A DNA stretch of 64,000 bases from Chlorokybus atmophyticus (lineage: Eukaryota; Plantae; Mesostigma and Chlorokybus algae): contig RHPI01003389.1 in NCBI GenBank assembly GCA_009103225.1, positions 496,001 through 560,000 of the forward strand, written 5' to 3'. A model generated the notes under the pieces. The model was not told the DNA's origin. It made no database searches and saw nothing but the letters and a program-made list of their open reading frames with translations. This document shows positions 46,946 to 63,858 of this stretch, one piece after another (position 1 is the first letter of the stretch; every line of letters starts with the position of its first letter). A program made the position numbers and the translations under genes.

Positions 46946-47427
46946 TGGCCCACTACCGCCGCCGCCGCCGCCGCCGCCGCTGTCACATCAGCAACATGCT
47001 GCGTAATAGCCACTGGGCACTTTTGCTTATAACGAGGGAAACGAGGCAATGTTTCTGTATTTTACCACTATGAGATTGTGATGGTGAAGCACATGACATC
47101 ACGACTTTGCTTTACACACTGTTCCGCCTTCACATTCAATAACCTCGCCACGTGCACGCTCCAAGTTGGTGTTATCCATCAGCATGTGGTCGCTATATAG
47201 TTAGCTGACCAGAAATAGACTGATGAGAAAGGACAGCAGCTTGTGTCAGCTGATGAGTTGATGGCCACATGCAAGCTTGCCACTATGCACAAGTTCCATG
47301 CTTGCAGGTCTCCGCAACCAGCATATATAGCAGCGAATATTCCATAGAGCTGTGTACATTGGAGTTGATAAACAAGCGCGATGCCCACAGCCAGGCACGC
47401 AATAACTGTACAGAATCCATCACCACA

Positions 47428-50400
47428 TTACACATCACTAAGTGTCACTTCACACTGTTTCCGCTTCAACTTATCTTCCCACTCCGCCTCTCTCTCCCTC
47501 CACTTCCTCTCCCACTCCCCATTAACCCTCCTCATCTCCCCTTCCACCTCCCTACTCCTCCTCTCTTCCAGCTCCTCCGCCGCCAGCTTCGCCCGCGCGA
47601 GCTCCCTCTCTATCGACGCCACGTACGTCGCGGTCGCGGTGGATTGCTGCAGCCTCTCGCACTCGGCGGACTTGCGCTTCAGCTCCGCTCTTGTTTCGGC
47701 TGCTGATGCGGCTTCGGTCCGAGCACGCTCGTCTGAATGCTCGCATGAGACCAACAGCTCCGTAACACGCCTCTCCGCTTGCTCCATCGCCTGCAAAGCA
47801 ACAATCCGTTGGAATACGCGTGTACCCAACAACTCACTTCAATCCAGTCTTTAGTGTTGCATTCTCAATTCAACCTGTGCATCGCTCCATGACCACAGCT
47901 TGTCACCTCACTTGGTGTACATCATTGTACGGATGCACGCAAGTATTCAAGTGCCCATTTATTGCGTCATTGACCTCACTGCCCATGCATGTGACCAGTC
48001 ATGCAACCATCAAAGCGTCCTTCCTCACCTCACGTTTGGCCGCCTGCACGCGTTCCATGGTCGCTGCCTCCCATATGGACCTCTCCTCAGCATGCCGCAA
48101 ACACTGCATTGTTCATATCTGGTCACAAACTTTTCACCGCAACCCCAACAAACCAGCAACTCCAGCGAATAACGTGAAATCGCGCTCACCTCTTCCTCCA
48201 GTGCCTTGCATGCAGCCCGCCACTCCTCCTTCGCCTCCCTCACGCGCTCCTCGCTGATCTCCGCCCCACGCGTCACGCCCTCCGCGCGCGCAGCCTCCAG
48301 CTGAGTGCGAGCAGAAGTGTGCGTTGTGTTTCACGCGCGCAGGTACACGCACGAGCTGATGCGTGTGTGTAAGCTGGAATTGGCAAGTATGAATTTTGAG
48401 ATCACTACACAAACAGCCGTTGTATGTATGTGTGCACCACCTGCGCGTCCTTCTCCCGCTCCCACACCGCCAGCTCCTCCCTGATGACGCCCTCGCTGAG
48501 GAGCCGCTCAAGAAGAGCCGTATCACTCTGAACCTACGAGTGATGTATGCATCAATACTTCACGCTGTTGAAGCATAGATCGATAAGACAACCTGTTGCC
48601 ATGCATGTTGTGACTACATAGCCATTTACCAAGAATCAAAATTGCGTATCATATCAGGTCTGGTAACCTATACATGTTGGTGTGTATACTGTTGCATATG
48701 CTGGCGGATACGGCAACGCTCAAGTCACCTGGAGAAGTTCTGTGGCCTTTTGGTGTGTAAGTGTCTCAACCGTCTCGCGCACATGCGCCTCCCACACACC
48801 CCGCGCGGCGGCGATGCCCTCCTCGCGCGCACCCACAATTTCCAGCAGCTTGTCCGTCTCCCACCCTCGCCTCTACACGCCATGTGGGGTGCACTCACGA
48901 AGGTGGATACCACATGTGTGCATGCAACCACACGTTGACACAACATAGTACCTGTGTTTCGGCCTCGGCCTTGAAAGCGCCTTGCGTTGCAGTCAAAGCC
49001 TCGTTGTGGCCTCGCCTCTGTGCGGGTAAGATATTGGTGTGTGTTTAGTTGTTGTACAGGTGGCAATGTTGTGTTTCTTCTCCCTCCTCACCTCTGCTTG
49101 GACAACGCTGTCCATCTCGATCACAGCACGCATGCCCGCAGCGCATAACCGCGCAAGCGTGGCATTGGTTCCCTCATTCCAATGCTGTTGTTGTTGCCTA
49201 CTCGCGTGCTCAGATGCAACATCTACTCTTGCGTCAGACACAACACTCGCCATGCCTTGAACAAAACCCGCAGCCGTTTCCGCACCCACTGCTCGCAGCC
49301 GTTTCAGCAGGCCTTCCGGCAGCTCAGTCAGCATAGCTTCCTCTCTGCAAAAGGCCAAAGCCTCTTCCAGCTCGTTTAACCGCATCTGGGCAGATGCCAA
49401 CCGGCATTGCATTTCACTGACGGCTTCCTCAGTTACTGTCTGACCGGCCAAATGGAACCGCAATAACTGGCATTCTTCCTCTAACTCGGTCAACCGGGAA
49501 CTGCGGTTGTCCACTTCGCCACGTAACTGACCGATCTCTTCCTGCAAAGACATGTTCGCAGTTGCTTTCTCGGCTAGTGTCTGCTCCAAAGCAGTGGAAT
49601 CTTCATCCCGCGACCGAAGCTCGCCCCTAAGCTCCTCAACTGCACATGGTTATCACGGGTTAATGACACAGACACACTCGCATCCACGTACAGATGTCTG
49701 CGCACACACGCATGCGCACGCCCACGCGCACGCATATGCATGCGTGCAGGCACGGGCACAGGCACAGGCACGCACACCACGACCACGACCATGACCACCA
49801 CCACCACCACCACCACCACAACGATGACGACAGCACAGACACACAAGCACGCGGTTATACCTTGACACACAAGCGCACGCATGTGCGGGCATACGACAAC
49901 AACCGTCACACTCACTGGCGTTATGGAGAGTGCGTGCCTCCTCTTCACCCTCTTCAAGCCTCTGCTGCTGTCTGAACAGCTGTCGCTTCAGCCCGGCCAC
50001 CATATTAACCTGCAGGAATGGTGAGCTTACTACGCCACATCACCGCCCCCAACAGCTGGCCCATCGAAATTGGAAACATTCCACTTACTGCCTTTGCGCT
50101 GATGCGCTCCTCTGTCTCGCGCATCCGCTCAGCCTCTGCCACTGCCGCTTGTATGCTCGCCTGCCAACTCAACTGGTCACACATAACTCACACTCACACA
50201 CGTGCTCACAACATTGTTGTTAGCGAGCACTGCCCACCTGAAGTTCTTCGTTCACCGCGGTCAAGCGCTGAACCTCACCATCTTTGCTCGCCAGCTGACA
50301 GGGGCGACAACACGTACACACATACACTTGAGTCAATTGTGATCTGGCTTACAAACAATCAGCTGCTAAGCACGCTCACCTTCTTCACCAACTTGCTGCT

Positions 50401-53400
50401 TGCTAGCTGCTCTGCTTCATCCGACACCGCTCTGGCCATTTCCATCCGTGCAACACGAGCCTGTAAATAGACACACGCACATGACTCATATGGTAATGGT
50501 ACACGCTCGTGTGCAAGCAACGCACCTGTGATTGTGCATTGACTGCAGTCAATCGCTGCACCTCCGCATCACTCTGCTCAAGCTGCCAAGCACAATATAT
50601 AAGCATGCACGCACGCTCTCACATCAATACACTTCAAGTCAACGAAGACTTGCCTCGAAGGCCCTCTGCGCAGACTCGGCCTGCATGTTCACAATCCGGG
50701 CCTAACCCAACGTAAGCATCACATCAAGTTACAACAACCATACTTCACACTCAGCAGCTTCAACAGAGCCTTGCTGCTCACCTGGAGAGAGGCAATATGT
50801 TGCTGCGTGCGCTCACTCTCGCCAGCTGTCACTTGCTGCTGCCTTTGCTCCAACAAAGCCTCCTCCAACTCTGCCATGCGCGCCTGACACACGCAAACAT
50901 GTCCAATACAACCACATGTACACGTGCAGACACACGCTGCGTAAACCCATGTGGTCATTACTCACCTTAAGCCCGGCGACTTTAGCCCGTAGTCCCGCAG
51001 CCGCAGCAACCTCGTCCTCATCCACCTCATCACCACCACCACCATGCTTGCGCCCCCTCTCCACCCGCTCCTCCTCCCGCTCCCTTTCGAGTCGCTGCAC
51101 CTCCCCCCACGCCTCCTCGATCTCCCGCTCGCGCGCACCCAGACGCGCACGCAGACCCTCCACCTCGTCCGCGTCCTCCTCAACACGCTTCGCCAACTGC
51201 GTGTGGATACACAAACACTCTTTGTGTGCCAACATTGAGCCGATGCTGATGCCTATAAACAACAAGTCATGCGCCTGCCTCTGTGCGGGCCTGGCGAAGG
51301 GACTTTCCCAGCGCGGCGGACTTCCTTTCCAGCTCGGCGATGCGGCGAGCGTCTTCGTCGGATGCTTGTTGGGACTCGGATTGGAGCCGCGTCACCTCGC
51401 TCTCCAAGCACCTGGCCTGGAAGCAGTCAAGCAGAGTGATGTGAAACCGTGGTTGTGAATGTGTGAGTGTGTGCGCGTGCACGTGTACATGCATACACGC
51501 ACGCACACACTCACCACCATCATCACTCTCGCTCACCCTATGCAGCGCCTCCTCCTGCGCCACCATAGCTCTTTCCACCGCCTCCTTGGCCTCCTTCACC
51601 TCCTCATGGTGGTGGTGGTTGTGGCTCCCTCCACCCGAGCTTTGCCCAAGCTCCGCCTTGATCGCGGCCACGTCGCGCGCGTGGCCCTCGCGCGCGGCCG
51701 CCAGGTCCGATGCGAGCCGGGACAGCTGAGAGGACTGGGCGGAGGACTGGGCGGTGAGGACGGCGAGGGACTGGTCCTTAGCACTGGGGACGGGAGGAGA
51801 GAGTGAGTGTTGTTTGTACACAATGCTGTGTATCAGTACGGGACGCGTCTTGTACGAAGTGTCATGCCGCGCACACACAATGCACATGTTGATGGCATCA
51901 GGTATTGAGTGCAGCCGTGTACAATGCATGCAATCTAGTAGCTGGAGAGTGCATGTCCTTTGGACGTGGTAAACATCCCGCACGCACCCCATAGCAACAA
52001 ACACGTACTGCATGCCTTTCGATGTATTGTAGTCCATGAGCAAAGGAGCAGTCTTGCCATACTCACCGCAATGCTGTCTTCATGGACGCCAGCTGCGCAT
52101 CCCTCCCCGCTCCCGCCTTCCGCAGCTGCTCTTCGCAGGCTGCCAGCCGCGCACTGAGCTCCAACACAACCACATCCTTCTCCTTGTCCTTGTCCACCTC
52201 CGCCCGCACCTTCGCAGCCTTGGCTCTGCCTGCTCTCGGTACCGCAGGCTTGCGCGAGGGCGGTCTGGCTTCCGAACTGCTGCCGCTGCGCCTGTCGGAC
52301 ACGGCTTCTTCTTCGCCCGCTTCACGCTCTCTGTCACGCTCCCTTTCGCTTTCCCTCTCATGTTGCAAAGCTTCCAGCTCTTCAACTCGCTTGAGAACCT
52401 TCTTCAGGTCCACATCTGCTGTGGGTCCTGGTGCCATGAATGCTGCGTGTTGCGTGCGTGTGGTTGTGATGTCGTTGTGTGAGTGGACCGCAGCATCTGG
52501 CTTGGCAGCGGGCGCAGTTAGAGGCCTCTCAGATGAAATGTCCACCAGGCGCTGCAATGTTGGTATGCAAACGGGCTTGAGTGTTGGAAGGCAAGATCAC
52601 TCATATGTCACACATGCATGCACGCACGGACAAGCATGCCAACATGTAAGCATGAGCGCACACACATGCGCATGTGCATGCGCACGCGCGCACACACAAA
52701 CAAACAAGCACATGCACACAGACAAAAATAGCCAACCCTCACGCACCTGAGGGATGTGGTCTTGCATAGCGGGTGCCATGAAGCTTGACGGCGGTGCTGC
52801 CAGCTGGATGATGACATACACAATACCGCTCAGCATATATGTACTGACAGCAACAGCATTGCTCTCTTCACCTCAGACTGAAGCCGCCTGGCTGCTGGCA
52901 GCGCTGCCGGTTTCACCAACACCTCCTGCCAAGAGTCCATTCCCCATCACAACATCCCCACGCAAAATTTACACATTCACAGATGCACTAGCATACCATA
53001 GTTTGTCCAGCATGAATCACGTGCGTGACATGCTCGCGCCGCCCCACACTGTTCACTTGTGGTGACGCCTCACGGACGACATCCGCACCGTCATCAGCAT
53101 TGTCCGCTGCGACGCGACCCTCCTGCAGCTGGCGGAGCGCCTGAGCCGCGTGGCGCTTGATCGTGAACAGGTGCTCGTCGGCCCAATCGGGAGTTGCCAT
53201 CTGTGCGGCGGGCAACGCATGCGTGGTCGGGTACTCTGCCCTGCACGCCCATATACAGGCATATGTGCACTGATGAAACTTTTGTTGACTTGCTGTAAGG
53301 AGTGTGAAGCAAGTCGTGCTATCATATCATGTGTGTGGTTGGTGATATACCATGCGGTTTACAGAGATATTAGGACTCTAAACACTAGATAGTGTTTAGA

Positions 53401-53886
53401 GTCCTAATATCTCTGTAGAAGGACACGCAAAGTGAGACACTGCCTGCGCGCCTGCAGTTTACAAGTTGTGTTGGCATGTTTAACAAGCATGTGGACATGT
53501 GTGCGTATGTACTCGTGGATGAGTCGGCGCTGGTTTTGCACAATCTGCGACACAATCTTCTGCTTGCGCCGCTGCCGCTCCAAATCCATCACCAAACGCC
53601 TGCCAAGCATGAGTCTTCAACACAAGAACAACAGCAACACGCACATGCACGCACGCGCACGCACATTGACACACACATACACACGTCCACATGCACACAC
53701 GCGCACGCGCACATACCTTCTTTCGCTGCTCTCAATTGCCAGCTGTCCCTGCAGCTCCTCAAGCGTGCCGCTGAGCGCCGCCACAGCCGCCGCGCCCGCC
53801 TCGCAAGACGAGTTGTTTACTGCTGCTGCTGCTGCTGCTGATGGTGATGGCTGCTGCTGGCGAGGATAGCGCTGCTCTCTCGACAT
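47428..53886 (-). CDS. Long multi-exon coiled-coil protein, family not recognised
   Basis: Many short E/R/Q/A-rich heptad exons (MSREQRYPRQQQ...LEELQGQLAIESSERR; LKKVLKRVEELEALQHERE; MEQTLAEKATANMSLQEEIGQLRGE; ...REAEWEDKLKRKQC) with GT-AG introns and one GC-AG intron. The 3' end is uncertain. Confidence 0.75.
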
Positions 53887-54710
53887 CGATGGGAGGCTGT
53901 ACTAGTTTGTTGTTGCTCGTCATCGGCTACCTTTTGCTGTTGCATGCACACGGATGTCTCCTTAATTCTTAAAACCAAGTCAAAGCACGCAACAGGCTAA
54001 GTAGCACATACCAGTGGAAGACCATAACTCAAACAAACAAACATCAAGTAGTAGTTCGTCAGAGCACACAGCGATTCCTTGATGATTGAGCTAACACAAC
54101 TTGACCATCACTGACTCCGCTGCATGGAACAGCTCACCAAGACCACAACCGGGAGAGTGTGACCTACCAACATTGTGTAGTACATATGCAAGATGTGCTG
54201 GAAATTACTATGTGACTTAGCAGTCTGTGACTTACCTGCTCATCACTGCACAAATAAACCATTCATGTACAGATTGGATCTACATACTGGCAATGCAGCA
54301 CAATCAGGTCAAGCTTTGGCAACCCTAAAGCCAAGTGTGGGCAGAACGACGCCAGTGTCTGTGGGGCTCCCTCTGTAGGCCACGGTGCCCTTACCTCCAG
54401 CAGCCGTCCCGCATGCCCGCAATTGATGTAAACTGTATGACATGGTTGTACATGCTGGCAACCATCCCGCCGCCGCCGCCGCCGCCGCTCGAGCAGACAA
54501 TGGGGTTAAGGTGGATTAAGCGACTGACTGTCAATTCAAACAGGCCGCAAACGCCCTGCCGTGCCAGCACCGCTTTGACCGCAGCGTGCATCGCCGTCTT
54601 CAACAGCATGTTAAGGACTCCTTAGATGTATAATAGGACCGTTGAGGTCGTTTTGAAATTTTATAGGCAAGATACATACAGTTGCGCAACACTCTATCAG
54701 TATATGGTCC

Positions 54711-54782
54711 GGGCAACTGGTCTAGTGGTATGATTCTCGCTTTGGGTGCGAGAGGTCCCGTGTTCGATTCACGGGTTGCCCC
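54711..54782 (+). tRNA. tRNA-Pro, anticodon UGG, intronless
   Basis: Cloverleaf: acceptor stem GGGCAAC/GTTGCCC, D-loop AGTGGT, anticodon arm CTCGC-TTTGGGT-GCGAG, T arm CCGTG-TTCGATT-CACGG; T-run terminator at 54806-54810. Confidence 0.97.
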
Positions 54783-54825
54783 CTACGTGACCACGTGACC
54801 ATCGCTTTTTCTTTGTCGCACCTTT

Positions 54826-54969
54826 GTGCGCCGGGACGCACAACTAGTGCGTCTGCGGCACCCGATGCAACCTTCAATGAGCTGCGCATCCTCACGTGTG
54901 CGCCGGGACGCACAACTAGTGCGTCTGCGGCACCCGATGCAACCTTCAATGAGCTGCGCATCCTCACGT
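54826..54969. repeat. Exact 2 x 72 bp tandem repeat, each unit with a GACGCAC-AACTA-GTGCGTC hairpin
   Basis: Units 54826-54897 and 54898-54969 are identical on reading. Confidence 0.92.
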
Positions 54970-55348
54970 GACGCCCTCGTTGCCGTCGCCTGCGACATGC
55001 GTGCATACAGTAAATTGGCCAAAACAATGTCTCTCCAACATGCTTATACTATGGATCCGAGGCGGCTGTCCTAGGCTAACACACAGGCTGTATACAGGCG
55101 CAGAATGGCATGCATGCACATAAACCCATCGAGAGATCAGTTCTACCGGAGCCTGAGGAGTGGTTGTGCTGTGCTGCCGCCTGCCTTGCCCCAATCCCTC
55201 TCTTGTGTGTGTTCAGAGTAGTAGAGTGAGCATGTTGGCAGTGAGCGTGGGGAAGCACAAGCAACATGGGTCACTGTTGACAACCTTGGGATAGTGATCG
55301 TGCTGGGCACAACAGCTATCTGTCTGCGTCCTCCTGTTTTGTGTTGCT

Positions 55349-58300
55349 ATGGACACCGACAACAGCATGCAAGATGCTTCAGGTATGTGCGTGTGCGCTA
55401 CTCTCCCAAGCAAATGGTCTGCAGCAGTTTTACTATGATTTTGCGCGCATATGAGTATCTGTTATTCACTGCATGACAGGCCAAGGGCGTGCGGTGCCTG
55501 TATCCGTGGCCGTGCGCCTTCGCCAGCGCGCCCACAGCAAGAAGAACAAGAAAGAGAAGCCTCCCTGCGTGGAGTGCTCACCGGACGCCGCCACCATCAT
55601 ATCCACGGGAGACGCCATCGCACGCAGCTCGTTCACGTTCGACTACGCGTTCAACCCAGAAACAATCACACAGGACATATTCCAAGTAAGTGGGCTTGCC
55701 ACATGCAACCCTCTATGACTACAGTGCCACAACTTGCAAACCGCCGCCACACGCCACACTGTGGCACGCGCGCACACGCACACGCACACGCACACGCACA
55801 CGCACATCTGTTGATGCCATCAGCCCATTGCTACAAGCCAAACCACTCTTACCATCTGTGCCTGTGGCTATGGCAGGCTTGTGTCCAGCCCCTCGTTGAG
55901 GCTTGCGTCAAGGACAACATTCATTCAGCTCTCCTCCTTCACGGTCCCGGCCGCATCAAGCGCGAGTTGGCTGGCCCCGATGGCCTCGCCGCTCTCGCCA
56001 TTGGCGCCGTGATGCAATCCGTGTCCGTGGGACTGATATCCTCCACCTGGTCCTCCTCTCCGTCCTCCTCGTCCTCCTCTAGATCCGTGCGGGCGAGCGC
56101 GGTGCGCGTGGCAGGACAGGAGATGAGTGATCTTGTATCTGGAGGGGGGCTGGATGGGGATGGGGCGGCGATAGCGCCAAGACCCAACGTGCCGGCTGTG
56201 AACTGGCCTGAGGGTGCGGAGGATGTTGTGGTGAAGGAAGCCAATGAGCTTATGGTGTTGTTTGACCGCGCCCTCGCCCTCCGCAAAGAGGTACAGCAGG
56301 ACCACTTTCACCAGCAGGTTCAGTGCACACAGACACTACCCCAGCAAGTCTGAGATGCATCTGACGTAGTAGTCCTCAAGCGGCGCACACGCACACAAGT
56401 GCATACACTCACGCACATGCACGCGCACACATTTACATAAAGGCGCACGCATGTGTGCGCGCACCGACAGACAGCACGTCACTTACCCTTCTCTCCGTGT
56501 GCACAGAAAGACACAAAAGAAGACAAGTCCTCCTCTGCACTGCTTCTGATAACAGTTCAAGTATGTTGATTGGCAGTACTGTAACTATGGCAAGTCAGCA
56601 GCCGCAACTCTCTGGTGTTGACTTGATGGTGTATAGGTGAGCAATGATGCCGGGACACGTGTTGGCACGCTGCTCATCGCCGACTTGGCAAGAAGGTGCG
56701 GGCATGAGGGTGCGATACAGTTTGCATATAACAGATGCCAATGTGTGCTCTCTGATTCCCTCTTTGCAGCGATTCTGAACCTGACAGCCACGACAACAAC
56801 ATGGCCGCCTTCAAAGACGTCATCAAACACCTGTCTGCCACGCGAAAAGCCACCACTGCCCCACCTTGTAAGCAGTTTATATCAATACTGTTACACGCAC
56901 ACACACACACACTCACCGCACGCTCAAACTCCCTCAGATGCGTCGTCCCCTCTCACTCTTCTTCTTTCCCACGCCCTTGGCGGTCCCTGCCGCACGCTGG
57001 TGCTGCTGCACGCCAACGCAGCGGCCAAGGCGCAGGCGGACACCATGGAACTACTGAGGTGAGGATTGAGAGTGCAGAAGAGTGTGACAGAGATAGAAGT
57101 GTGTGTGGGGGGGGTTGTGTTATTGAGTTCGTCGTGCTGTTTCAGGTTTTGTACCAGAGTCAAGCAGGTGATGAACTATCCGACTGTGAACGAGATCGCA
57201 AAGCAGGTAGGTTTGTGTTGATGTGCTGCAGTGAGCTTTCGTGTTGTTGTGTTTGAGCTGACTGTGCTGCGGCGATTGGTGAAGGTGCCTGCTCCGGGAG
57301 CGCTTGTGCCGTGCCCGATATGCACCGAGCCGCTCGATGAACAGGTGTGCATATGTGTACGTGTGTGTTTTTCTTTCTCTGAATGTGTGCGTGTTCGCGA
57401 GTGTATTATGTGATGGTGACTGACTGTTTTGGCTGTTGACAGGACATGCAGTTGACGCCCTGTGCGTGTGGTTACCGCCCCTGCCTCCTCTGCTTCGACA
57501 AGCTCATGACACAGGTAGCGTACCCAACACAAGCATCCAGGTGCTGCCGATGGCTATGTGTGCTCCTCTGATACCGACAATACTGCCACAGGGTGATGCG
57601 CGCTGCCCGTCCTGCCGCGCACCGTACGGCCTCCAACCCACGTTCAACGTCGACGCCAGCGATGTCGCGGAGAGGGCTAACCTCGTGCCGGAACGCATCC
57701 TGGACTCGCACCACCAGCAGGTGCAGTACAGTAGGGTACTCAGTTGACTACGTGCGTGTGCGCATGTACACATGTGTGTCTCCGTGCATACGTGCATGAC
57801 CCTCCTTGCTGTCCACAGGGCGTGACATACTACTTGCTAAAGTGGCGTGGGCTCAGCGATGCCGCGAGCACGTGGGAGCCCGAGGCTGCCGTGCGCGGCG
57901 GGACAGACGCCAGCACACTCATAGCCCAATACGAAGCCGCAAGAGCCGGTACGTTGTGGTTGGTAAAGTGTGTATGTGTCATGTTATACTGACTCGCACA
58001 CGTGCACACAGCCATGGTGCTTCAGCAGACCGGGAAGAAAGCCCCTCCTTCTCTCTACAACAGCGCCATCAACAACAACAACAATCCACACAACAACCAC
58101 CCGAGTGCAGTCTGGTACCCGCCCGAGCTCGCGGCAGTGAGCGCCATCAACCCGCACACGCTGCCACCGCAAGCATTCCACCATGGACCAATCTGGTAAG
58201 TGGTAGCTGAAGCCAACACAACATGGTATCAAACTGTTACACACATTTGTGTATGTGTGTGCAGGCGGCAGCCGGGTGCTCCCCCGAGCGCGATATCCGT

Positions 58301-61300
58301 ATCCGTGCTTCCACCAGCGCCGAGTGCTTTCATGCCTCCTCGCTCAGGTATCCACAATCAACACTACCCCAACAACACCAACACCCACGCCGCGCACGCT
58401 CTCCGGGTACAAGCCACATCCGGCTGGAGCAACATCGCCCCACCCAACCCCAACATGTATCAGACATCCATCATTGGCGGCACCATTCACAAGGTTGACG
58501 CATACGGTGGTGTTGGCGGAGGAGGAGGTGGGCCAGGTGGTAGCCGTGTGAAGGTGGATGACATCGATGACGGTGATGAAGAGGGTGGGAACGCGCGCAT
58601 ACTCACGGTGAAGAGAGCGATGCCCGCCTCGCTCACGGCGCCGTATAGAATAAGTCTCATGCTGCGGCTGGCGGCACTGATTGGATTTCTGTATTGGAGG
58701 ATTTCGAACCCAAACCCGGCGGCGTACGCGCTGTGGGGCATATCGGTCGCATGCGAGGTACGTGCGTGTGCGTGTGTACGGGCACGGATGTGGCAGTGTA
58801 TGCGTGCGTGCGCGAATGTGTGTGGCTTAGGCATGTATGCGACTGTATTTCCGCACCTTGTGACGCGTGCACTGCACGGGTCTATGAGTATGTGCGTTGC
58901 GCATGCTCACGCATGTGCAACGCACATACACGCACGCGTAAGCAAATTGACAGTGAGACACACTCTTTCTGCGTGACACACACACAGAAAGAGTGCATCT
59001 CTGTGCGTTTGTGTGCGCACATGTATGTCTCCGTCTGAATGTACATGTGGGCTTCAAACAGAGTGCTTGTTCCCAACCACTCCTTCCTTCTGCTCAACTC
59101 ATATCTCCCCTCCCCTGCCAGGTCTGGTTCGGCATGGCTTGGCTCCTCGACCAAGCCCCCAAGCTCTCCCCCGTCTACCGCGTGACCTACACGGACCGTC
59201 TCCCCCGCGACGCCTCCCTCCTCCCCGCCGTCGACATCGTCATCACCACCGCCGACCCGTCCAAAGAACCGCCCATCACGACCGCGAACACGGTGCTGTC
59301 GTGCATGGCGATGAGGTACCCGGCGGGGAAACTGGCGATATACGTCACGGATGACGCGGCGTCCAAGTGGGTGTTTGATACCATCGCGGAGACGGTGAGG
59401 TTTGCGAGGGTGTGGGTGCCGTTCGCGCATAGGTACAATGTGGAGCCGAGGGCGCCGGAGATGTACTTCAGCAACGTCAAAGGCGTACGCAGAGGAGGTG
59501 AGTTGCGTGCAAAAACTAGCATGACTGGCTCATATACTCACTGAGACACTGGCTGAGTCTCTCGCAGCAATACACCAATCCAAGCACGCACACCCACACA
59601 CTCACCCACCACCACACTCTCACCATCTCACACGCTCACTCTCACTCTTACTCTCTCACCCACACTGGACTCACTCGCTCACTCATCCACACGGTGGACC
59701 CACCCACTCACTCACTCTCTCACTCACTATGGTCTCACTCTCTGCATAACACTCCCCCACCCACCCACCCGACCCTCTCTCTCCCCCCCTGGCAGCCCCC
59801 TCTTCCCCCCGCGCCCGCGCCGAGCAGGACTCCGCCCGCCGCCTTGTCCACGCCGCCTACGACAAGTTCAAGTCCCGCGTCGCCGCTCTGGGCGAGCTCG
59901 CCAACGCCGCAGACAACAACGACTCCGACTACTACCAGGGGTGGCCGGGGAGGGACAGGAGGGACCACGACCCCATCGTGCAGGTGTTTCATCACCCGGG
60001 GGAGGATGAAGACAAGGACTGCGTGCTGCCGTATGTCGTGTACATCGCGCGTGAGAAGCGACTGGGATTCATGCACCACAAGAAGGTGCGTGCGTGTGGG
60101 CGTGTTGGTGTGCGCGTGCACGCAAGCTGCAGTTTGTGTGTACGCTTGTGTGTGTGGGTGACTTGCAAGCCCTTTACTCAACACACCCACCCCTACCCAT
60201 GCAGGCCGGTAGTGCCAACGCTGCGGTGCGCGCCTCCGCCCTCATCACCAACGGTCAGTTCCTGATGAACCTGGACTGCGACCACTACGTCCACAACAGC
60301 GACGCCCTCCGCGAGGCCATGTGCATCCTGCTCGACCCCGTCGTCGGAGACTCCATCGGGTACGTGCAGTTCCCGCAACGCTTCGACGCCATCGACAGAT
60401 CCGACAGGTGAGTCGGTGTTACCGTTGTTGTTGTTGTTGTTGTGTTGATGATAACTCTGTGGCACATCCACACTTGCAGATATGCCAACCACAACATTGT
60501 GTTCTACGAAGCCGGCATGAAAGGTCTCGACGGCGTGCAAGGACCGTTCTACATCGGCACAGGCTGCGTCTTCCGCCGAAAGGTGAGACACACACTGTGA
60601 CGCAACTTAACATACTGATCATGTCATCCCCCTACCCACACACACACACCTTGCAACAGGCCTTGTATGGTGCTACTCCCGACCACTTGCCCAAGTCTCG
60701 CGACTGCTTGTGTTGTTGTTGTTTCGGCGGCGGTCGTCGTCGCAAGGAGGAGGAGGAGCGTGCCAAGGCGAGGAAGAACGAGGCCGCCGCGCACGCCGCG
60801 GATGCGCACGTACTCGCTGCGGATCACCTCGCCATCGTACTCGCAAGCCGCACACGCGCAAACAACAACAGCAACTTCAACCAGGCGACACGCGTACCGA
60901 GCACAACGGCCAAAAGACTTGGACTCCTCCCGTCACTGGTCAGAAGGTACACACACACAACGTCACAACATTTGCGTGTCACACGCAATACGTGTGTATG
61001 TGCAAGCGTGCACATGTGTGCGTGTGTGTGCGTGCGCGTGCGCGCGTGTGCAGACGACATTGCATGCAGTCTTTCTGCAATACTGGGCGAGAACGCACGG
61101 CTCGACACGCACACGCACACGCATACGCACTCACACTCGCACTCTCTCCCCTCAGTGTCGCTCAAGTCGAGGGCAGCGCCCTCCCCAAGCCCTCCAAGCG
61201 CCGCTCCACCCTGGCCCCGATCCCCCCCCAGTCCCCTCGGACGGTGCTGACGGACGTCGCGACCGCCATCGCGTGCGACTACGAGGACCAGAGCGAGTGG

Positions 61301-63315
61301 GGGAAGGAGATCGGGTGGCTTTATGGATCAGTCACGGAAGATGTGGTCACCGGGTAGGGAGTGCGGGTGTGGGTGTGGGTGTGTATGTGTGCGTGCATAT
61401 ATGTCCAAGTCAACGTACACAATCATGGGCCAACTCTCATGCTTCTCAACTGTATGCGTGCGGACATGTATGTATATGTGTGTTTGCACGCGCACACATA
61501 CACGTGTTCGCACGCATATGGACCAAAGTACAAGTACATGCATGCGTATGCATGCACAACTGCAGACTCTCTTGCTACTACACACTCACAGGCAAGCTCA
61601 CACTCTCATGTGTACACTGTATCAACACTCCCCCGACGTTGTTCTCTCCACAGTTACCTCCTCCACTCCCGCGGTTGGCGCAGCGCCTACTGCAACCCCT
61701 CTCGTCCCGCCTTCAAGGGCACGGCCCCCATCAACCTGGCGGACCGGCTGCACCAGCTGCTGCGCTGGGCCACGGGCTCCGTCGAGATATTCTTCTCGAG
61801 GAGGAACGCGCTGCTGTGCGGGGGAGGGTCCAGACTCAAGTTGGCACAGGTGGGGGGAGGATGGATTGTTGTTGTGGACGTGCGTGCGTATGAGCGTGAG
61901 TGATTGTGTGTATTCCACTTGTGTTCATCAGCGCAAGCGCGTGTGCGTCTGTGCTCTCGTCAGAGTGTGTGCGCATGCGCGTGCACATGTCTGCGTGTGC
62001 GTATACGTTGGTGTGTGCGTGTGCGTGTGTACGAGCGATCCTGTGATACTCATCACTAACATCACCTCCGCAGCGTTTGGCGTACATCAACGTGTGCGTG
62101 TACCCCTTCACGGGCATCATCCTGCTTCTGTACACGCTGCTGCCTCCCGTCTGTCTCATGGCCAACCGCTTCATCATGCCTGCCGTCAACCTTGAGGCCG
62201 TCATCTTCTACCTCTGCTTCTTCCTCACGGTGTTCGCCTCGGCGCTGCTCGAGCTAAGGTGGTCTGGAGTCTCTATCGACGCATGGTGGCGCACGGAACA
62301 GTTCTGGATCATCGCTGGCATCTCCGCACACGTCGCCGGTAACACACCTTTGCTGATGAGACTCTCAAACATGCTTTTTGCATTCACTCTCACACATGCA
62401 GTGACACGCACACTTGTGCTCACGCTCATGGTGACGGTTGCACTTTGGCACAGATTGAGCGTGTATGAGAGTATGAGTGTGAGAGTAGGTTTCGCACTCG
62501 CACTCACACTTACTCAATGTGAATTTGTGGATTTGTACACTCGCACCGATGTCACGCTTGCACACATGCACAACCTCACGCTCACGGTCTCACGCTACGC
62601 AAAACTTGAGTTGCATCACACTTACGCTCAGCACACTGACACGCTTACGCTCAGCACTATGGTCCCCTCTCCAGGTGTAATCCAGGGTGTTATGAAGGCT
62701 GTTGCTGGTGTCGACATTGAGTTTCGCTTGACTGCCAAAGGAAACGAGCATGACGACGATGACTTTGACTCCACCAATCCGCGCGAGAACAGTGCAGAGC
62801 TCTACAAATTTAGGGTGGGTGTGTCTGTGAGTTGCGCAGTGAGACAGAGTGATGCTGCCATTGTTGACGTGGCGGTTGTGCCGACAGTTCACGTGGCTCA
62901 TTGTCGTGCCCGTCACTGTGATGCTGCTGAACATTCTTGGCATCGTTGCTGGCTTTGCCACGGCTATTACCGGAGGCAACTGGGGTGAGTAGTAGTCTCA
63001 ATCAAGGACCAGCTGGCCATCGGTGAGGTGTCTACAACCCACTCACATGCTGCGCTTACCTTTTCAGCGGAGCTGGCCGGCAAAGTCATCTTCAGCTTGT
63101 GGGTGCTCATCCACATGTACCCATTCGCCAAGGTGAGTCGTGCCTTCTGGCAGCGTGATGTCTCACACGCAAGGCAACATTATCAAAATGATTCCTTGCT
63201 GCAGGGCTTGATGGGCAAACGGAGCCGCCCGCCGACCATTGTCATCATCTGGAGTCTGCTCATCACAGTTGTGTTCGCCGGAGCATGGGTGCTGGTCTTC
63301 CGCAGAAACGATTGA
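55349..63315 (+). CDS. Kinesin-like motor / C4C4 RING / chromodomain / cellulose synthase-like (CSLD/CesA, GT2) fusion protein, about 1480 aa, 26 exons
   Basis: Exons: 55349-55382, 55480-55685, 55877-56290, 56507-56560, 56637-56695, 56770-56867, 56938-57058, 57146-57206 (kinesin); 57285-57344, 57443-57514, 57592-57720 (RING); 57819-57948 (chromodomain, begins in the previous exon); 58012-58195, 58265-58757, 59122-59497, 59796-60085, 60205-60407, 60480-60582, 60660-60946, 61156-61353, 61654-61849, 62074-62338, 62675-62814, 62888-62984, 63068-63132, 63205-63315 (linker and synthase). All introns are GT-AG and the phases match (4446 nt CDS). Synthase motifs: [30 protein letters not shown]. Confidence is very high for the synthase part and somewhat lower for the single-transcript fusion. 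Confidence 0.85.
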
Positions 63316-63492
63316 GCACCAGTGGCCCTTTACCCAAACCGTGTTGACGGGAAGCATGCTAGAGCATGCATTGTGCCTGAGTGTGGTGTTAAACCGTGTG
63401 CTGGACTGCTCACGAGAAGTGCGTCCTGTGATGACTCTCAAAAAACAAGTTGTTTGATATGCGAAATACACAGCTATGTGCGTCATAAGCCC

Positions 63493-63858
63493 NNNNNNNN
63501 NNNNNNNNNNNNNNNNNNNNNNNNNNNNNNNNNNNNNNNNNNNNNNNNNNNNNNNNNNNNNNNNNNNNNNNNNNNNNNNNNNNNNNNNNNNNNNNNNNNN
63601 NNNNNNNNNNNNNNNNNNNNNNNNNNNNNNNNNNNNNNNNNNNNNNNNNNNNNNNNNNNNNNNNNNNNNNNNNNNNNNNNNNNNNNNNNNNNNNNNNNNN
63701 NNNNNNNNNNNNNNNNNNNNNNNNNNNNNNNNNNNNNNNNNNNNNNNNNNNNNNNNNNNNNNNNNNNNNNNNNNNNNNNNNNNNNNNNNNNNNNNNNNNN
63801 NNNNNNNNNNNNNNNNNNNNNNNNNNNNNNNNNNNNNNNNNNNNNNNNNNNNNNNNNN
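63493..63858. other. Assembly gap (N run)
   Basis: N bases. Confidence 1.

What the first reader, a model, noticed from the sequence alone, without database searches (positions are those of the whole stretch)
55349..63315. Kinesin motor domain fused to a cellulose synthase-like enzyme: a candidate self-tethering wall synthase
Seen: 26 exons splice with GT-AG introns and matching phases into one ORF. Residues about 1-349 follow the kinesin fold in order: [31 protein letters not shown]...[81 protein letters not shown] (neck linker). Next come the [32 protein letters not shown]...RCPSCRAPY, a chromodomain, a low-complexity linker and a complete synthase. Support for one gene: introns in the linking region are only about 63-98 nt, leaving little room for a terminator and promoter, and the RING sits where CesA/CSLD proteins carry their N-terminal RING. 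Known: land plants link cellulose synthase complexes to microtubules through separate proteins (CSI1/POM2, CC1/2), and fungi fuse myosin motor domains to class V/VII chitin synthases. I know of no kinesin-CesA/CSL fusion. Inference: a direct microtubule-anchored glucan synthase, a convergent counterpart of myosin-chitin synthase. Weakest link: intron 8 (57207-57284) has an AAG acceptor, though with a CTGAC branch-like motif at 57258.
Basis: partly seen in the sequence, partly recalled or inferred. Interest (0 to 1): 0.96.

Follow-up and report, generated by a model that had tools for sequence, protein, structure and literature searches.

The report
Cellulose synthase with dead kinesin head
The early-diverging green alga Chlorokybus encodes a cellulose-synthase-type enzyme that carries a degenerate kinesin motor domain, a RING finger and a chromodomain on its cytoplasmic front end; Mesostigma has the same arrangement, I found no description of it, and it may be an independent way of coupling wall-polymer synthesis to the cytoskeleton.

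Summary
Twenty-six GT-AG exons (55349-63315, + strand) splice into one 1481-aa ORF. Its order is kinesin motor homologue (Pfam PF00225, 68.7 bits), CesA-type C4C4 RING, HP1-like chromodomain, low-complexity linker, then a complete CesA-family synthase with all catalytic motifs.

The organism is Chlorokybus atmophyticus. The deposited model Chrsp94S08346 also fuses these parts, though with several splice errors.

The key support is the ortholog in Mesostigma viride, Mv02509. It has the same four domains in the same order, and its synthase, RING and chromodomain are about 62% identical to this one. Exon 9 carries the first RING cysteines and has no start codon in its open frame, so it must be an internal exon.

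The "microtubule-anchored" reading is only partly supported. In Chlorokybus the P-loop, switch I, switch II glycine and loop L11 are lost. Three conserved basic L12/alpha5 residues of the tubulin-facing surface are lost in both algae. Two of the three chromodomain cage aromatics are also gone in Chlorokybus.

The head is therefore a pseudo-motor, most plausibly a passive tether or adaptor like the myosin-like domain of fungal chitin synthases. No RNA evidence could be obtained. I found no published description. Earlier notes of this scan on the same stretch agree.

The parts
55349..63315 (+). Whole coding region: 26 exons, 1481 aa. Corresponds to the deposited model Chrsp94S08346 of Chlorokybus atmophyticus.
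   Evidence: Model rebuilt. Organism and deposited model. End-to-end collinear alignment with Mesostigma Mv02509.
55349..57206 (+). Exons 1-8: kinesin motor homologue (aa 1-349) ending in a neck-linker-like NYPTVNE. There is no coiled-coil neck after it.
   Evidence: Pfam PF00225 at 68.7 bits. phmmer to kinesins. Alignment A1. Fold match.
55940..55963 (+). Degenerate P-loop: HGPGRIKR in place of GQTGSGKT. The Lys is kept, the preceding Gly is Ile, and the Mg-binding Thr is Arg.
   Evidence: Alignment A1. Coordinates. The pairwise alignment with Mesostigma instead reads this as a deletion of the loop.
56522..56557 (+). Switch I remnant: DKSSS followed by a 3-residue gap where kinesins have SSRSH.
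56682..56773 (+). Switch II remnant DLARSD in place of DLAGSE, spanning intron 5. It is followed by a deletion of about 16 residues in L11.
57207..57284 (+). Intron 8, the join between the kinesin and RING parts (78 nt, AAG acceptor). An alternative in-frame GAG acceptor gives an exon start at 57258 and would add 9 residues.
   Evidence: The deposited model uses the GAG site. DNA contigs of run X1 cover 57138-57314 without a break, so there is no misassembly here.
57312..57615 (+). C4C4 RING (C-x2-C-x13-C-x-C-x4-C-x2-C-x11-C-x2-C) spread over exons 9, 10 and 11.
   Evidence: Pfam zf-RING_4 on exon 10. 62.5% identity to the Mesostigma RING. Matches the N-terminal RINGs of CesAs. Cysteine positions.
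57682..57947 (+). HP1-like chromodomain (end of exon 11 plus exon 12). The aromatic cage reads L/W/L.
   Evidence: Pfam Chromo. PDB matches to CBX5/HP1. The Mesostigma counterpart keeps Y/W/F.
58012..58592 (+). Low-complexity Asn/Pro/Gly-rich linker (exon 13 and the first part of exon 14), with the 69-nt intron 13 inside it.
   Evidence: No Pfam match. Poorly conserved with Mesostigma. GC3 of 0.74 and 0.65 in frame. X1 DNA contig covers 58036-58267.
58593..63315 (+). CesA-family GT2 synthase core (exons 14-26): conserved N-terminal membrane region, catalytic domain and C-terminal membrane helices.
   Evidence: PF03552 collinear over the exons and 832 bits on the deposited protein. 62.6% identity to Mesostigma. 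Hydrophobic segments.
59341..59364 (+). YVTDDAAS, the first conserved Asp motif.
60274..60288 (+). DCDHY, the DxD motif.
61331..61345 (+). VTEDV, the TED motif.
61754..61768 (+). QLLRW, the QxxRW motif.

Best explanation
Shown or strongly supported: this is one gene of Chlorokybus atmophyticus encoding a chimeric CesA-family processive glycosyltransferase. An N-type kinesin motor domain has been added in front of the usual CesA RING. An HP1-type chromodomain has been inserted between the RING and the first membrane helices. The same architecture in the Mesostigma viride ortholog places the fusion no later than the common ancestor of these two lineages.

The synthase part keeps every catalytic motif, so it should be an active beta-glycan (probably beta-1,4-glucan) synthase. 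The Chlorokybus kinesin part keeps the fold but has lost the nucleotide-handling motifs, so it cannot be an ATP-driven motor.

Inferred (about 40% of my belief for this specific mechanism): the pseudo-motor acts as a passive cytoplasmic tether or adaptor. It would hold the synthase, or the vesicles that deliver it, at particular cortical sites. Avidity would come from oligomerisation of the synthase, because the head has no dimerising neck of its own. The Mesostigma version keeps the P-loop, switch II and an intact chromodomain cage, and may preserve the more active ancestral state.

The confidence given (0.7) is for the shown part: one chimeric gene with an ATPase-dead kinesin head.
For: - The single ORF and splice model are confirmed.
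- Exon 9 holds the first two RING cysteines but has no Met in its open frame back to the stop at 57219-57221, so it is an internal exon.
- Only 78 nt separate the last kinesin exon from the first RING exon, and only 69 nt separate the linker exons 13 and 14.
- The RING is homologous to the N-terminal RING of canonical CesAs. RING and synthase therefore belong together, and the chromodomain lies between them.
- Mesostigma Mv02509 has Kinesin 126-489 (188.6 bits), zf-RING_4 732-778, Chromo 809-857 and Cellulose_synt 1018-1730. It aligns collinearly with my model and is its sister in the tree with support 100.
- The deposited Chlorokybus model also fuses the parts.
- Read-derived DNA contigs span both critical junctions.
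- The motif losses are seen in alignment A1.
- The fold is retained.
- In fungal myosin-chitin synthases the motor-like domain tethers rather than transports, and P-loop or switch I mutations in CsmA leave its function and localisation unaffected (PMC3252574; PMC4425547).
Against: - No transcript evidence. The only runs holding this DNA are low-coverage DNA runs, and no transcript-derived protein fragment bridges the junctions.
- Both fused models are automated predictions.
- The kinesin part is only 28.7% identical between the two algae, against about 62% for the rest. It is no closer to the Mesostigma motor than to unrelated kinesins, so constraint on it is weak.
- Conserved tubulin-facing basic residues are lost in both species and L11 is deleted in Chlorokybus, which argues against canonical microtubule binding.
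- The structure prediction used an alignment made of kinesins, so it is not fully independent.
Confidence: 0.7

Rival explanations
1. The kinesin-like exons are a decaying relic in Chlorokybus. They are still spliced into the mRNA, or bypassed by an internal start such as Met338 in exon 8, but they no longer do anything. The working protein is in effect a RING-chromo-CesA.
For: All three nucleotide motifs and L11 are lost. Identity to Mesostigma is 28.7%, against about 62% elsewhere. The chromodomain cage is degraded in the same species. Codon bias (GC3 0.64-0.75) is weaker than in the conserved synthase exons (0.84-0.90).
Against: 349 codons over 8 exons stay open with intact GT-AG sites. Pfam still scores 68.7 bits over the whole motor. 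The predicted fold is complete, with pTM 0.79. In-frame GC3 remains above intron GC except in the 54-nt exon 4.
Confidence: 0.15
2. This is a gene-model artefact. A kinesin-like gene and a RING-chromo-CesA gene (or three separate genes) lie head to tail and have been merged by prediction.
For: There is no RNA evidence. Retaining intron 8 or intron 13 gives early stops at 57219 and 58197. The deposited model has clear splice errors, so it was not tightly guided by transcripts. Exon 14 contains in-frame Met codons that could start a RING-less synthase.
Against: Exon 9 has no start codon and carries half of the RING. The gaps are only 78 and 69 nt. The RING is the normal CesA RING, so the chromodomain is internal to the synthase gene. 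The same order is found in Mesostigma, in a model with a different naming style, with 62% identity on both sides of the junctions.
Confidence: 0.07
3. One reading: the head is a working microtubule binder that anchors or moves the synthase directly along cortical microtubules during wall deposition.
For: It has a kinesin fold at the cytoplasmic N-terminus of a plasma-membrane synthase. A basic patch [13 protein letters not shown] lies near the start. Mesostigma keeps GETGAGKT and DLAGSE.
Against: ATP-driven stepping is excluded in Chlorokybus by the loss of the P-loop Thr/Gly, switch I and the switch II Gly. L11 is deleted, and the PYRDSKLTR basic residues are lost in both species. There is no neck coiled coil. 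The net charge of the domain is about zero. Mesostigma has scales, and cellulose has not been found in it.
Confidence: 0.1
4. The locus makes two products. The first is the full synthase. The second is a soluble kinesin-RING-chromo protein of about 541 aa, produced by retaining intron 13, that works elsewhere, for example as a chromatin or ubiquitin-pathway factor.
For: Retaining intron 13 gives a stop right after exon 13. HP1-like chromodomains and RINGs are typical of nuclear proteins. The head carries a basic KKNKKEK patch.
Against: This is pure inference with no transcript data. The RING is of the CesA type. The Chlorokybus chromodomain cage is degraded.
Confidence: 0.05

Closest known systems
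Streptophyte CesA / CslD-type cellulose synthases (GT2, Pfam PF03552)
   Same: N-terminal C4C4 RING. Conserved membrane region before the catalytic domain. DD, DCDHY, TED and QxxRW motifs. A plant-conserved-region-like insert. C-terminal helices. 42-48% identity to land-plant and charophyte CesAs.
   Different: It carries a kinesin domain before the RING and a chromodomain after it. Together with Mesostigma Mv02509 it forms a separate long-branch clade beside the other streptophyte CesAs, including the Chlorokybus paralog Chrsp134S08684. The product and the complex form (rosette or linear) are unknown.
[quoted passage not shown]
   Same: A cytoskeletal motor domain is fused to the N-terminus of a processive GT2 polysaccharide synthase. 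In the fungal proteins the motor part acts as a tether and ATPase motifs are dispensable (PMC3252574, PMC4425547). This parallels the dead nucleotide site here.
   Different: The motor superfamily differs (kinesin rather than myosin), as do the synthase family (CesA rather than chitin synthase) and the kingdom. The algal protein has extra RING and chromodomain parts. Binding to any filament is untested here.
Land-plant linkers between cellulose synthase complexes and microtubules (CSI1/POM2, CC1/2)
   Different: Those are separate proteins unrelated to kinesin. Here the candidate linker is part of the synthase polypeptide, and its microtubule affinity is doubtful.
Catalytically inactive kinesin-like domains (pseudo-motors)
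   Same: The kinesin fold is retained while the P-loop and switch motifs are lost.
   Different: I know of none fused to a membrane glycosyltransferase. This statement rests on my own knowledge and on negative literature searches.
Other lineage-specific domain additions to CesA (oomycete PH-domain CesAs, red-algal CBM48 CesAs, tunicate CesA-GH6)
   Same: They illustrate that the N- or C-terminus of CesA-family enzymes accepts extra domains (my own knowledge, not checked here).
   Different: None of those additions is a cytoskeletal motor domain or a chromodomain.

Membership tests
Kinesin motor domain (PF00225) | Profile match above the curated threshold over the whole motor | tested here: met
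   68.7 bits against a cut-off of 29.3, E 5.6e-19, on residues 1-360. Collinear phmmer alignments to six kinesins over residues 21-349.
Kinesin motor domain (PF00225) | Kinesin fold | tested here: met
   AlphaFold model with pTM 0.79 and mean pLDDT 72.7. Foldseek against PDB gives Eg5, OSM-3, KIF3 and KIF15 at E about 3e-21 and TM 0.7-0.83. Caveat: the input alignment consisted of kinesins.
Kinesin motor domain (PF00225) | Walker A P-loop GxxxxGK[ST] | tested here: not met
   HGPGRIKR in Chlorokybus. GETGAGKT is intact in Mesostigma.
Kinesin motor domain (PF00225) | Switch I (SSRSH) and switch II (DLAGSE) | tested here: not met
   SSS plus a gap, and DLARSD, in Chlorokybus. Mesostigma has PDRAS (partly kept) and an intact DLAGSE.
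Kinesin motor domain (PF00225) | Conserved tubulin-facing elements (L11, and the basic residues of L12/alpha5 in PYRDSKLTR) | tested here: not met
   L11 is shortened by about 16 residues. The segment reads PYASSPLTL in Chlorokybus and PYGESSITE in Mesostigma. Actual binding is not testable with these tools.
CesA/Csl cellulose synthase family (PF03552, GT2) | Profile match across the family domain | tested here: met
   Exons 15-24 match profile positions 1-649 collinearly. 832 bits on the deposited protein.
CesA/Csl cellulose synthase family (PF03552, GT2) | Catalytic motifs D, DxD, TED and QxxRW | tested here: met
   [18 protein letters not shown] and QLLRW are all present and conserved with Mesostigma.
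CesA/Csl cellulose synthase family (PF03552, GT2) | N-terminal RING-type zinc finger of CesA/CslD | tested here: met
   Eight Cys in C4C4 spacing. zf-RING_4 hit. Matches the N-terminal RING of 56 of the 128 fetched proteins, nearly all of them CesA-family.
CesA/Csl cellulose synthase family (PF03552, GT2) | Orthology to embryophyte CesA as opposed to CslD | tested here: inconclusive
   With Mesostigma it forms its own clade beside the other streptophyte CesAs. No labelled CslD sequences were in the tree. Wang et al. call the Chlorokybus genes 'CESA/CSLD-like'.
CesA/Csl cellulose synthase family (PF03552, GT2) | Makes beta-1,4-glucan | not testable with these tools
   Needs an enzyme assay or genetics.
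Chromodomain (PF00385, HP1/CBX type) | Profile match | tested here: met
   E 5.3e-9 on exon 12. 38.8 bits on the deposited protein. CBX5 at E 5.9e-10.
Chromodomain (PF00385, HP1/CBX type) | Three-residue aromatic cage for methyl-lysine | tested here: not met
   L/W/L at the positions of HP1 Y24/W45/Y48 in Chlorokybus. Y/W/F in Mesostigma.
Motor-domain-polysaccharide synthase fusions (fungal myosin-chitin synthases) | Myosin-17-type motor-like domain fused to a chitin synthase | tested here: not met
   The head is a kinesin and the enzyme is a CesA. This is an analogue by architecture, not a member.

The most novel reading that the evidence does not exclude
The common ancestor of Mesostigma and Chlorokybus, near the base of the streptophytes, had a cellulose-synthase-type enzyme with its own kinesin head and its own methyl-lysine-reader-type chromodomain. 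That would be a built-in coupling of glycan synthesis to microtubules or to a modified cytoskeletal partner. It would have evolved independently of the CSI1/CC linker system of land plants and convergently with fungal myosin-chitin synthases. Mesostigma would retain the active form, and Chlorokybus a rigor-like or adaptor form.
Probability: 0.3. Interest if true: 0.9.

Novelty: new variant of a known kind. Interest (0 to 1): 0.8.

Why it matters
How cellulose synthases are positioned by the cytoskeleton is a central question in plant cell biology. In land plants it is answered by separate linker proteins. A CesA-family enzyme that carries a kinesin-derived head in its own polypeptide, conserved in the two earliest-diverging streptophyte lineages, would be a second solution, fused rather than via separate linker proteins. 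It would also be a striking convergence with fungal myosin-chitin synthases.

It offers a simple experimental system: one polypeptide and two natural states, since the nucleotide site is intact in Mesostigma and dead in Chlorokybus. With it one can ask what a motor fold contributes to a wall synthase.

It also bears on a point in the literature. Mesostigma does carry a CesA-family (PF03552) gene, whereas one genome paper reports CESA as absent there.

Tried and rejected
- RNA evidence: two searches of public runs found only low-coverage DNA runs. Laying them gave unspliced contigs and no joints, so the splice junctions remain unverified by transcripts.
- Per-exon Pfam scans almost missed the kinesin. 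Only exon 7 hit, at E 0.007. Per-exon PDB searches were uninformative. The spliced protein could not be passed to tools as letters, so I used the deposited protein P0001, which is identical over residues 1-349.
- Exon 3 searched against 1.84 billion cluster representatives found only the locus's own protein plus spurious repeats.
- A search for transcript-size fragments bridging the junctions (P0001:290-700) found nothing.
- The Mesostigma gene is not on record in the contig index, so intron positions could not be compared.
- A metagenome scan with the RING-chromo alignment returned four contigs with unrelated chromodomains only.
- I tested whether the two fused kinesin domains are each other's closest relatives. 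They are not, by bit score, so a single origin of the fusion rests on architecture and on orthology of the rest of the protein.
- Misassembly at the junctions is rejected, because read-derived contigs cover 57138-57314 and 58036-58267 continuously.
- Supplement and full-text searches for the gene identifiers found nothing.
- CesA versus CslD assignment was not resolved, because the tree contained no labelled CslD sequences.

Full report
**What is in the sequence.** I translated 55300-63400 in three frames and fixed the exon borders by their flanking sequence. It has 26 exons, and all 25 introns begin with GT and end with AG (24 CAG, one AAG). The phases match, and the CDS of 4446 nt encodes 1481 residues from the ATG at 55349 to the TGA at 63313-63315. 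In the chosen frame the third-position GC is 0.55-0.91 in every exon except the 54-nt exon 4 (0.39), while intron GC is 0.42-0.59. Upstream lies about 1.3 kb without long ORFs, then a coiled-coil-rich gene on the minus strand. An assembly gap starts 178 nt after the stop.

**Identity of the parts: synthase, chromodomain, RING.** Scanned exon by exon, the synthase exons hit Pfam Cellulose_synt (PF03552) collinearly. The profile positions are 1-82, 97-184, 185-251, 253-286, 287-341, 388-428, 430-493, 495-581, 584-614 and 622-649. This validates those junctions. Exon 12 is a chromodomain (E 5e-9), and exon 10 matches zf-RING_4 at 28 bits.

**Identity of the parts: the kinesin.** The kinesin claim could not be tested on single exons. 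Only exon 7 hit, weakly, although a language-model search placed exon 3 among kinesin clusters. Searching exon 3 against 1.84 billion representatives returned one real hit, P0001. P0001 is the deposited model jgi/Chlat1/9023/Chrsp94S08346 of Chlorokybus atmophyticus, and it is identical to my model over residues 1-349.
- On P0001:1-360, Pfam Kinesin scores 68.7 bits against a cut-off of 29.3, E 5.6e-19.
- phmmer reaches true kinesins at E 2e-8 in a 5.8-billion-sequence space, with collinear alignments over residues 21-349.
- A structure predicted with a small kinesin alignment (pTM 0.79) matches kinesin motors in the PDB at E about 3e-21 and TM 0.7-0.83.

P0001 (1560 aa) also fuses kinesin, chromodomain and synthase.
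- it uses a GAG acceptor (exon start 57258), adding 9 residues;
- it skips exon 10, which is the core of the RING;
- it removes 24 nt inside exon 14;
- it splices intron 14 differently;
- it keeps parts of introns 22 and 25.

The two exceptions are the intron 8 acceptor and the 24-nt segment in exon 14, which fall in unaligned linker.

**Is it one gene?** I could obtain no RNA. The only public runs holding this DNA are low-coverage DNA runs whose contigs run through introns. No transcript-sized protein fragments bridge the junctions. The case therefore rests on four points.
1. Exon 9 carries the first CxxC of the RING. Its open frame runs back to a stop at 57219-57221 without any Met, so it must be spliced to an upstream coding exon. 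The kinesin neck exon ends 78 nt away in a compatible phase.
2. The spliced RING is homologous to the N-terminal RING of canonical CesAs. It matched 56 of the 128 fetched proteins, nearly all of them CesA-family, at their N-termini. RING and synthase therefore belong to one gene, and the chromodomain between them is internal to it.
3. The closest relative of the synthase part is Mesostigma viride Mv02509-RA.1 (P0012, 1734 aa), at 58-63% identity and sister with support 100. It has Kinesin 126-489 (188.6 bits), zf-RING_4 732-778, Chromo 809-857 and Cellulose_synt 1018-1730 in the same order. It aligns with my model from end to end. Its identifier style differs from that of the Chlorokybus annotation, which suggests a different pipeline.
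4. DNA contigs cover 57138-57314 and 58036-58267 without a break, which argues against a misassembly.

I put the single-gene reading at about 0.85.

**What kind of kinesin head.** I aligned the head with the Mesostigma motor and six ordinary kinesins (alignment A1). The Chlorokybus domain differs from the consensus as follows:
- HGPGRIKR replaces the P-loop GQTGSGKT;
- SSS plus a gap replaces switch I SSRSH;
- DLARSD replaces switch II DLAGSE;
- about 16 residues of L11 are missing.

The pairwise alignment with Mesostigma can even be read as a deletion of the P-loop. Mesostigma keeps GETGAGKT and DLAGSE and is a clear N-type motor, matching kinesin-1 at E 2e-38 in the PDB.

In both algae the three conserved basic residues of the PYRDSKLTR segment (L12/alpha5) are replaced, giving PYASSPLTL and PYGESSITE. 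From established knowledge of kinesin-tubulin contacts, this segment faces the microtubule.

The head has no neck coiled coil: the neck-linker-like NYPTVNE runs straight into the RING in Chlorokybus. Between the two algae the head is 28.7% identical, against about 62% for the RING, chromodomain and synthase. The two heads are no closer to each other than to other kinesins.

The chromodomain shows the same asymmetry. It is HP1/CBX5-like in both species. The aromatic cage reads Y/W/F in Mesostigma and L/W/L in Chlorokybus.

**Mechanism.** What is shown is an intact CesA-type catalytic core (DD, DCDHY, TED, QLLRW), a retained kinesin fold and a dead nucleotide site. What is inferred is the role of the head. 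ATP-driven movement is excluded for Chlorokybus. The most economical role is a passive tether or adaptor on the cytoplasmic face of the synthase or its delivery vesicles.

The fungal myosin-chitin synthases are the best functional parallel. The myosin-like domain of Mcs1 shows no motility and lengthens vesicle residence at the exocytosis site (PMC3252574). P-loop or switch I mutations in CsmA do not affect its function or localisation (PMC4425547).

Whether the partner here is the microtubule is open. The losses in the tubulin-facing segment count against it. So does the biology of Mesostigma, whose motile stage is covered by scales and in which cellulose has not been found (PMC10762512). A basic patch near the N-terminus and avidity through synthase oligomers could compensate. 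I give the tether or adaptor role about 0.4, a functionless relic about 0.15, and a canonical microtubule anchor about 0.1.

**Comparison with what is known, and novelty.**
- The enzyme is a member of the CesA/Csl family by profile, motifs and RING. Its placement as CesA or CslD is unresolved. Wang et al. describe three 'CESA/CSLD-like' genes in Chlorokybus and no CESA in Mesostigma, while Liang et al. report one CesA in Mesostigma. Neither main text mentions kinesin.
- The head is a member of the kinesin superfamily by profile and fold, but it fails the catalytic-motif tests.
- The protein is an analogue of the fungal motor-synthase fusions, not a member of that group.
- Seven full-text searches found no description of a kinesin-CesA architecture. 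The gene identifiers are also absent from the supplements held for Wang et al..

The sequences themselves are public predictions. What appears to be new is recognising and interpreting the architecture. I class it as a new variant of a known kind.

**Limits.**
- There are no transcripts, no Mesostigma DNA and no second Chlorokybus species.
- The large protein searches are capped, and only the top 120 synthase relatives were listed, so other taxa with the same architecture could have been missed.
- A metagenome scan found only unrelated chromodomains.
- Earlier first-stage notes of this scan on the same stretch (pseudo-ATPase head, chromodomain, mosaic synthase) agree with what I found.

Noticed in passing
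window 55349-63315 (deposited protein P0001): The public gene model Chrsp94S08346 differs from the homology-supported model at six places. It uses a GAG acceptor (exon start 57258), skips exon 10 (57443-57514, the RING core), removes 24 nt inside exon 14, mis-splices intron 14, and reads parts of introns 22 and 25 as coding.
   Followed up: yes
P0012 (Mesostigma viride Mv02509-RA.1): Mesostigma carries a full PF03552 synthase (850 bits). One genome paper states that CESA is absent from M. viride (PMC7027972), while the other reports one CesA (PMC6947507). The gene also holds a 240-residue low-complexity linker between the motor and the RING that Chlorokybus lacks.
   Followed up: partly
P0093 (Closterium sp. 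NIES-64, 2266 aa): This is a CesA-family protein annotated with protein kinase domains (PF07714, PF00069) on the same polypeptide. It may be another domain fusion to a CesA, or a merged gene model.
   Followed up: no
window 54825-54970: A perfect tandem duplication of a 72-nt unit (2.0 copies, 100% identity) lies in the intergenic region about 380 nt upstream of the start codon.
   Followed up: partly
window about 47400-53900, minus strand: Several ORF pieces rich in Glu, Arg, Leu and Ala suggest a multi-exon coiled-coil protein gene that diverges from the synthase gene. The region between them (about 54000-55349) would then be a shared promoter region.
   Followed up: no
window 63493-63858: A 366-nt assembly gap lies only 178 nt after the stop codon, so the 3' UTR and polyadenylation site may be incomplete.
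   Followed up: no
window 55521-55559: A basic patch [13 protein letters not shown] sits in the first strands of the kinesin-like domain. It is absent from the other kinesins aligned. It could be a charge-based filament-binding element or a nuclear-localisation-like signal.
   Followed up: no
window 58067 and 58267 (run X1): Two low-coverage DNA contigs follow the window and then continue into unlike sequence at these points, which lie next to AAC and TG low-complexity runs. These are probably assembly-graph joins at repeats, but I did not check.
   Followed up: no
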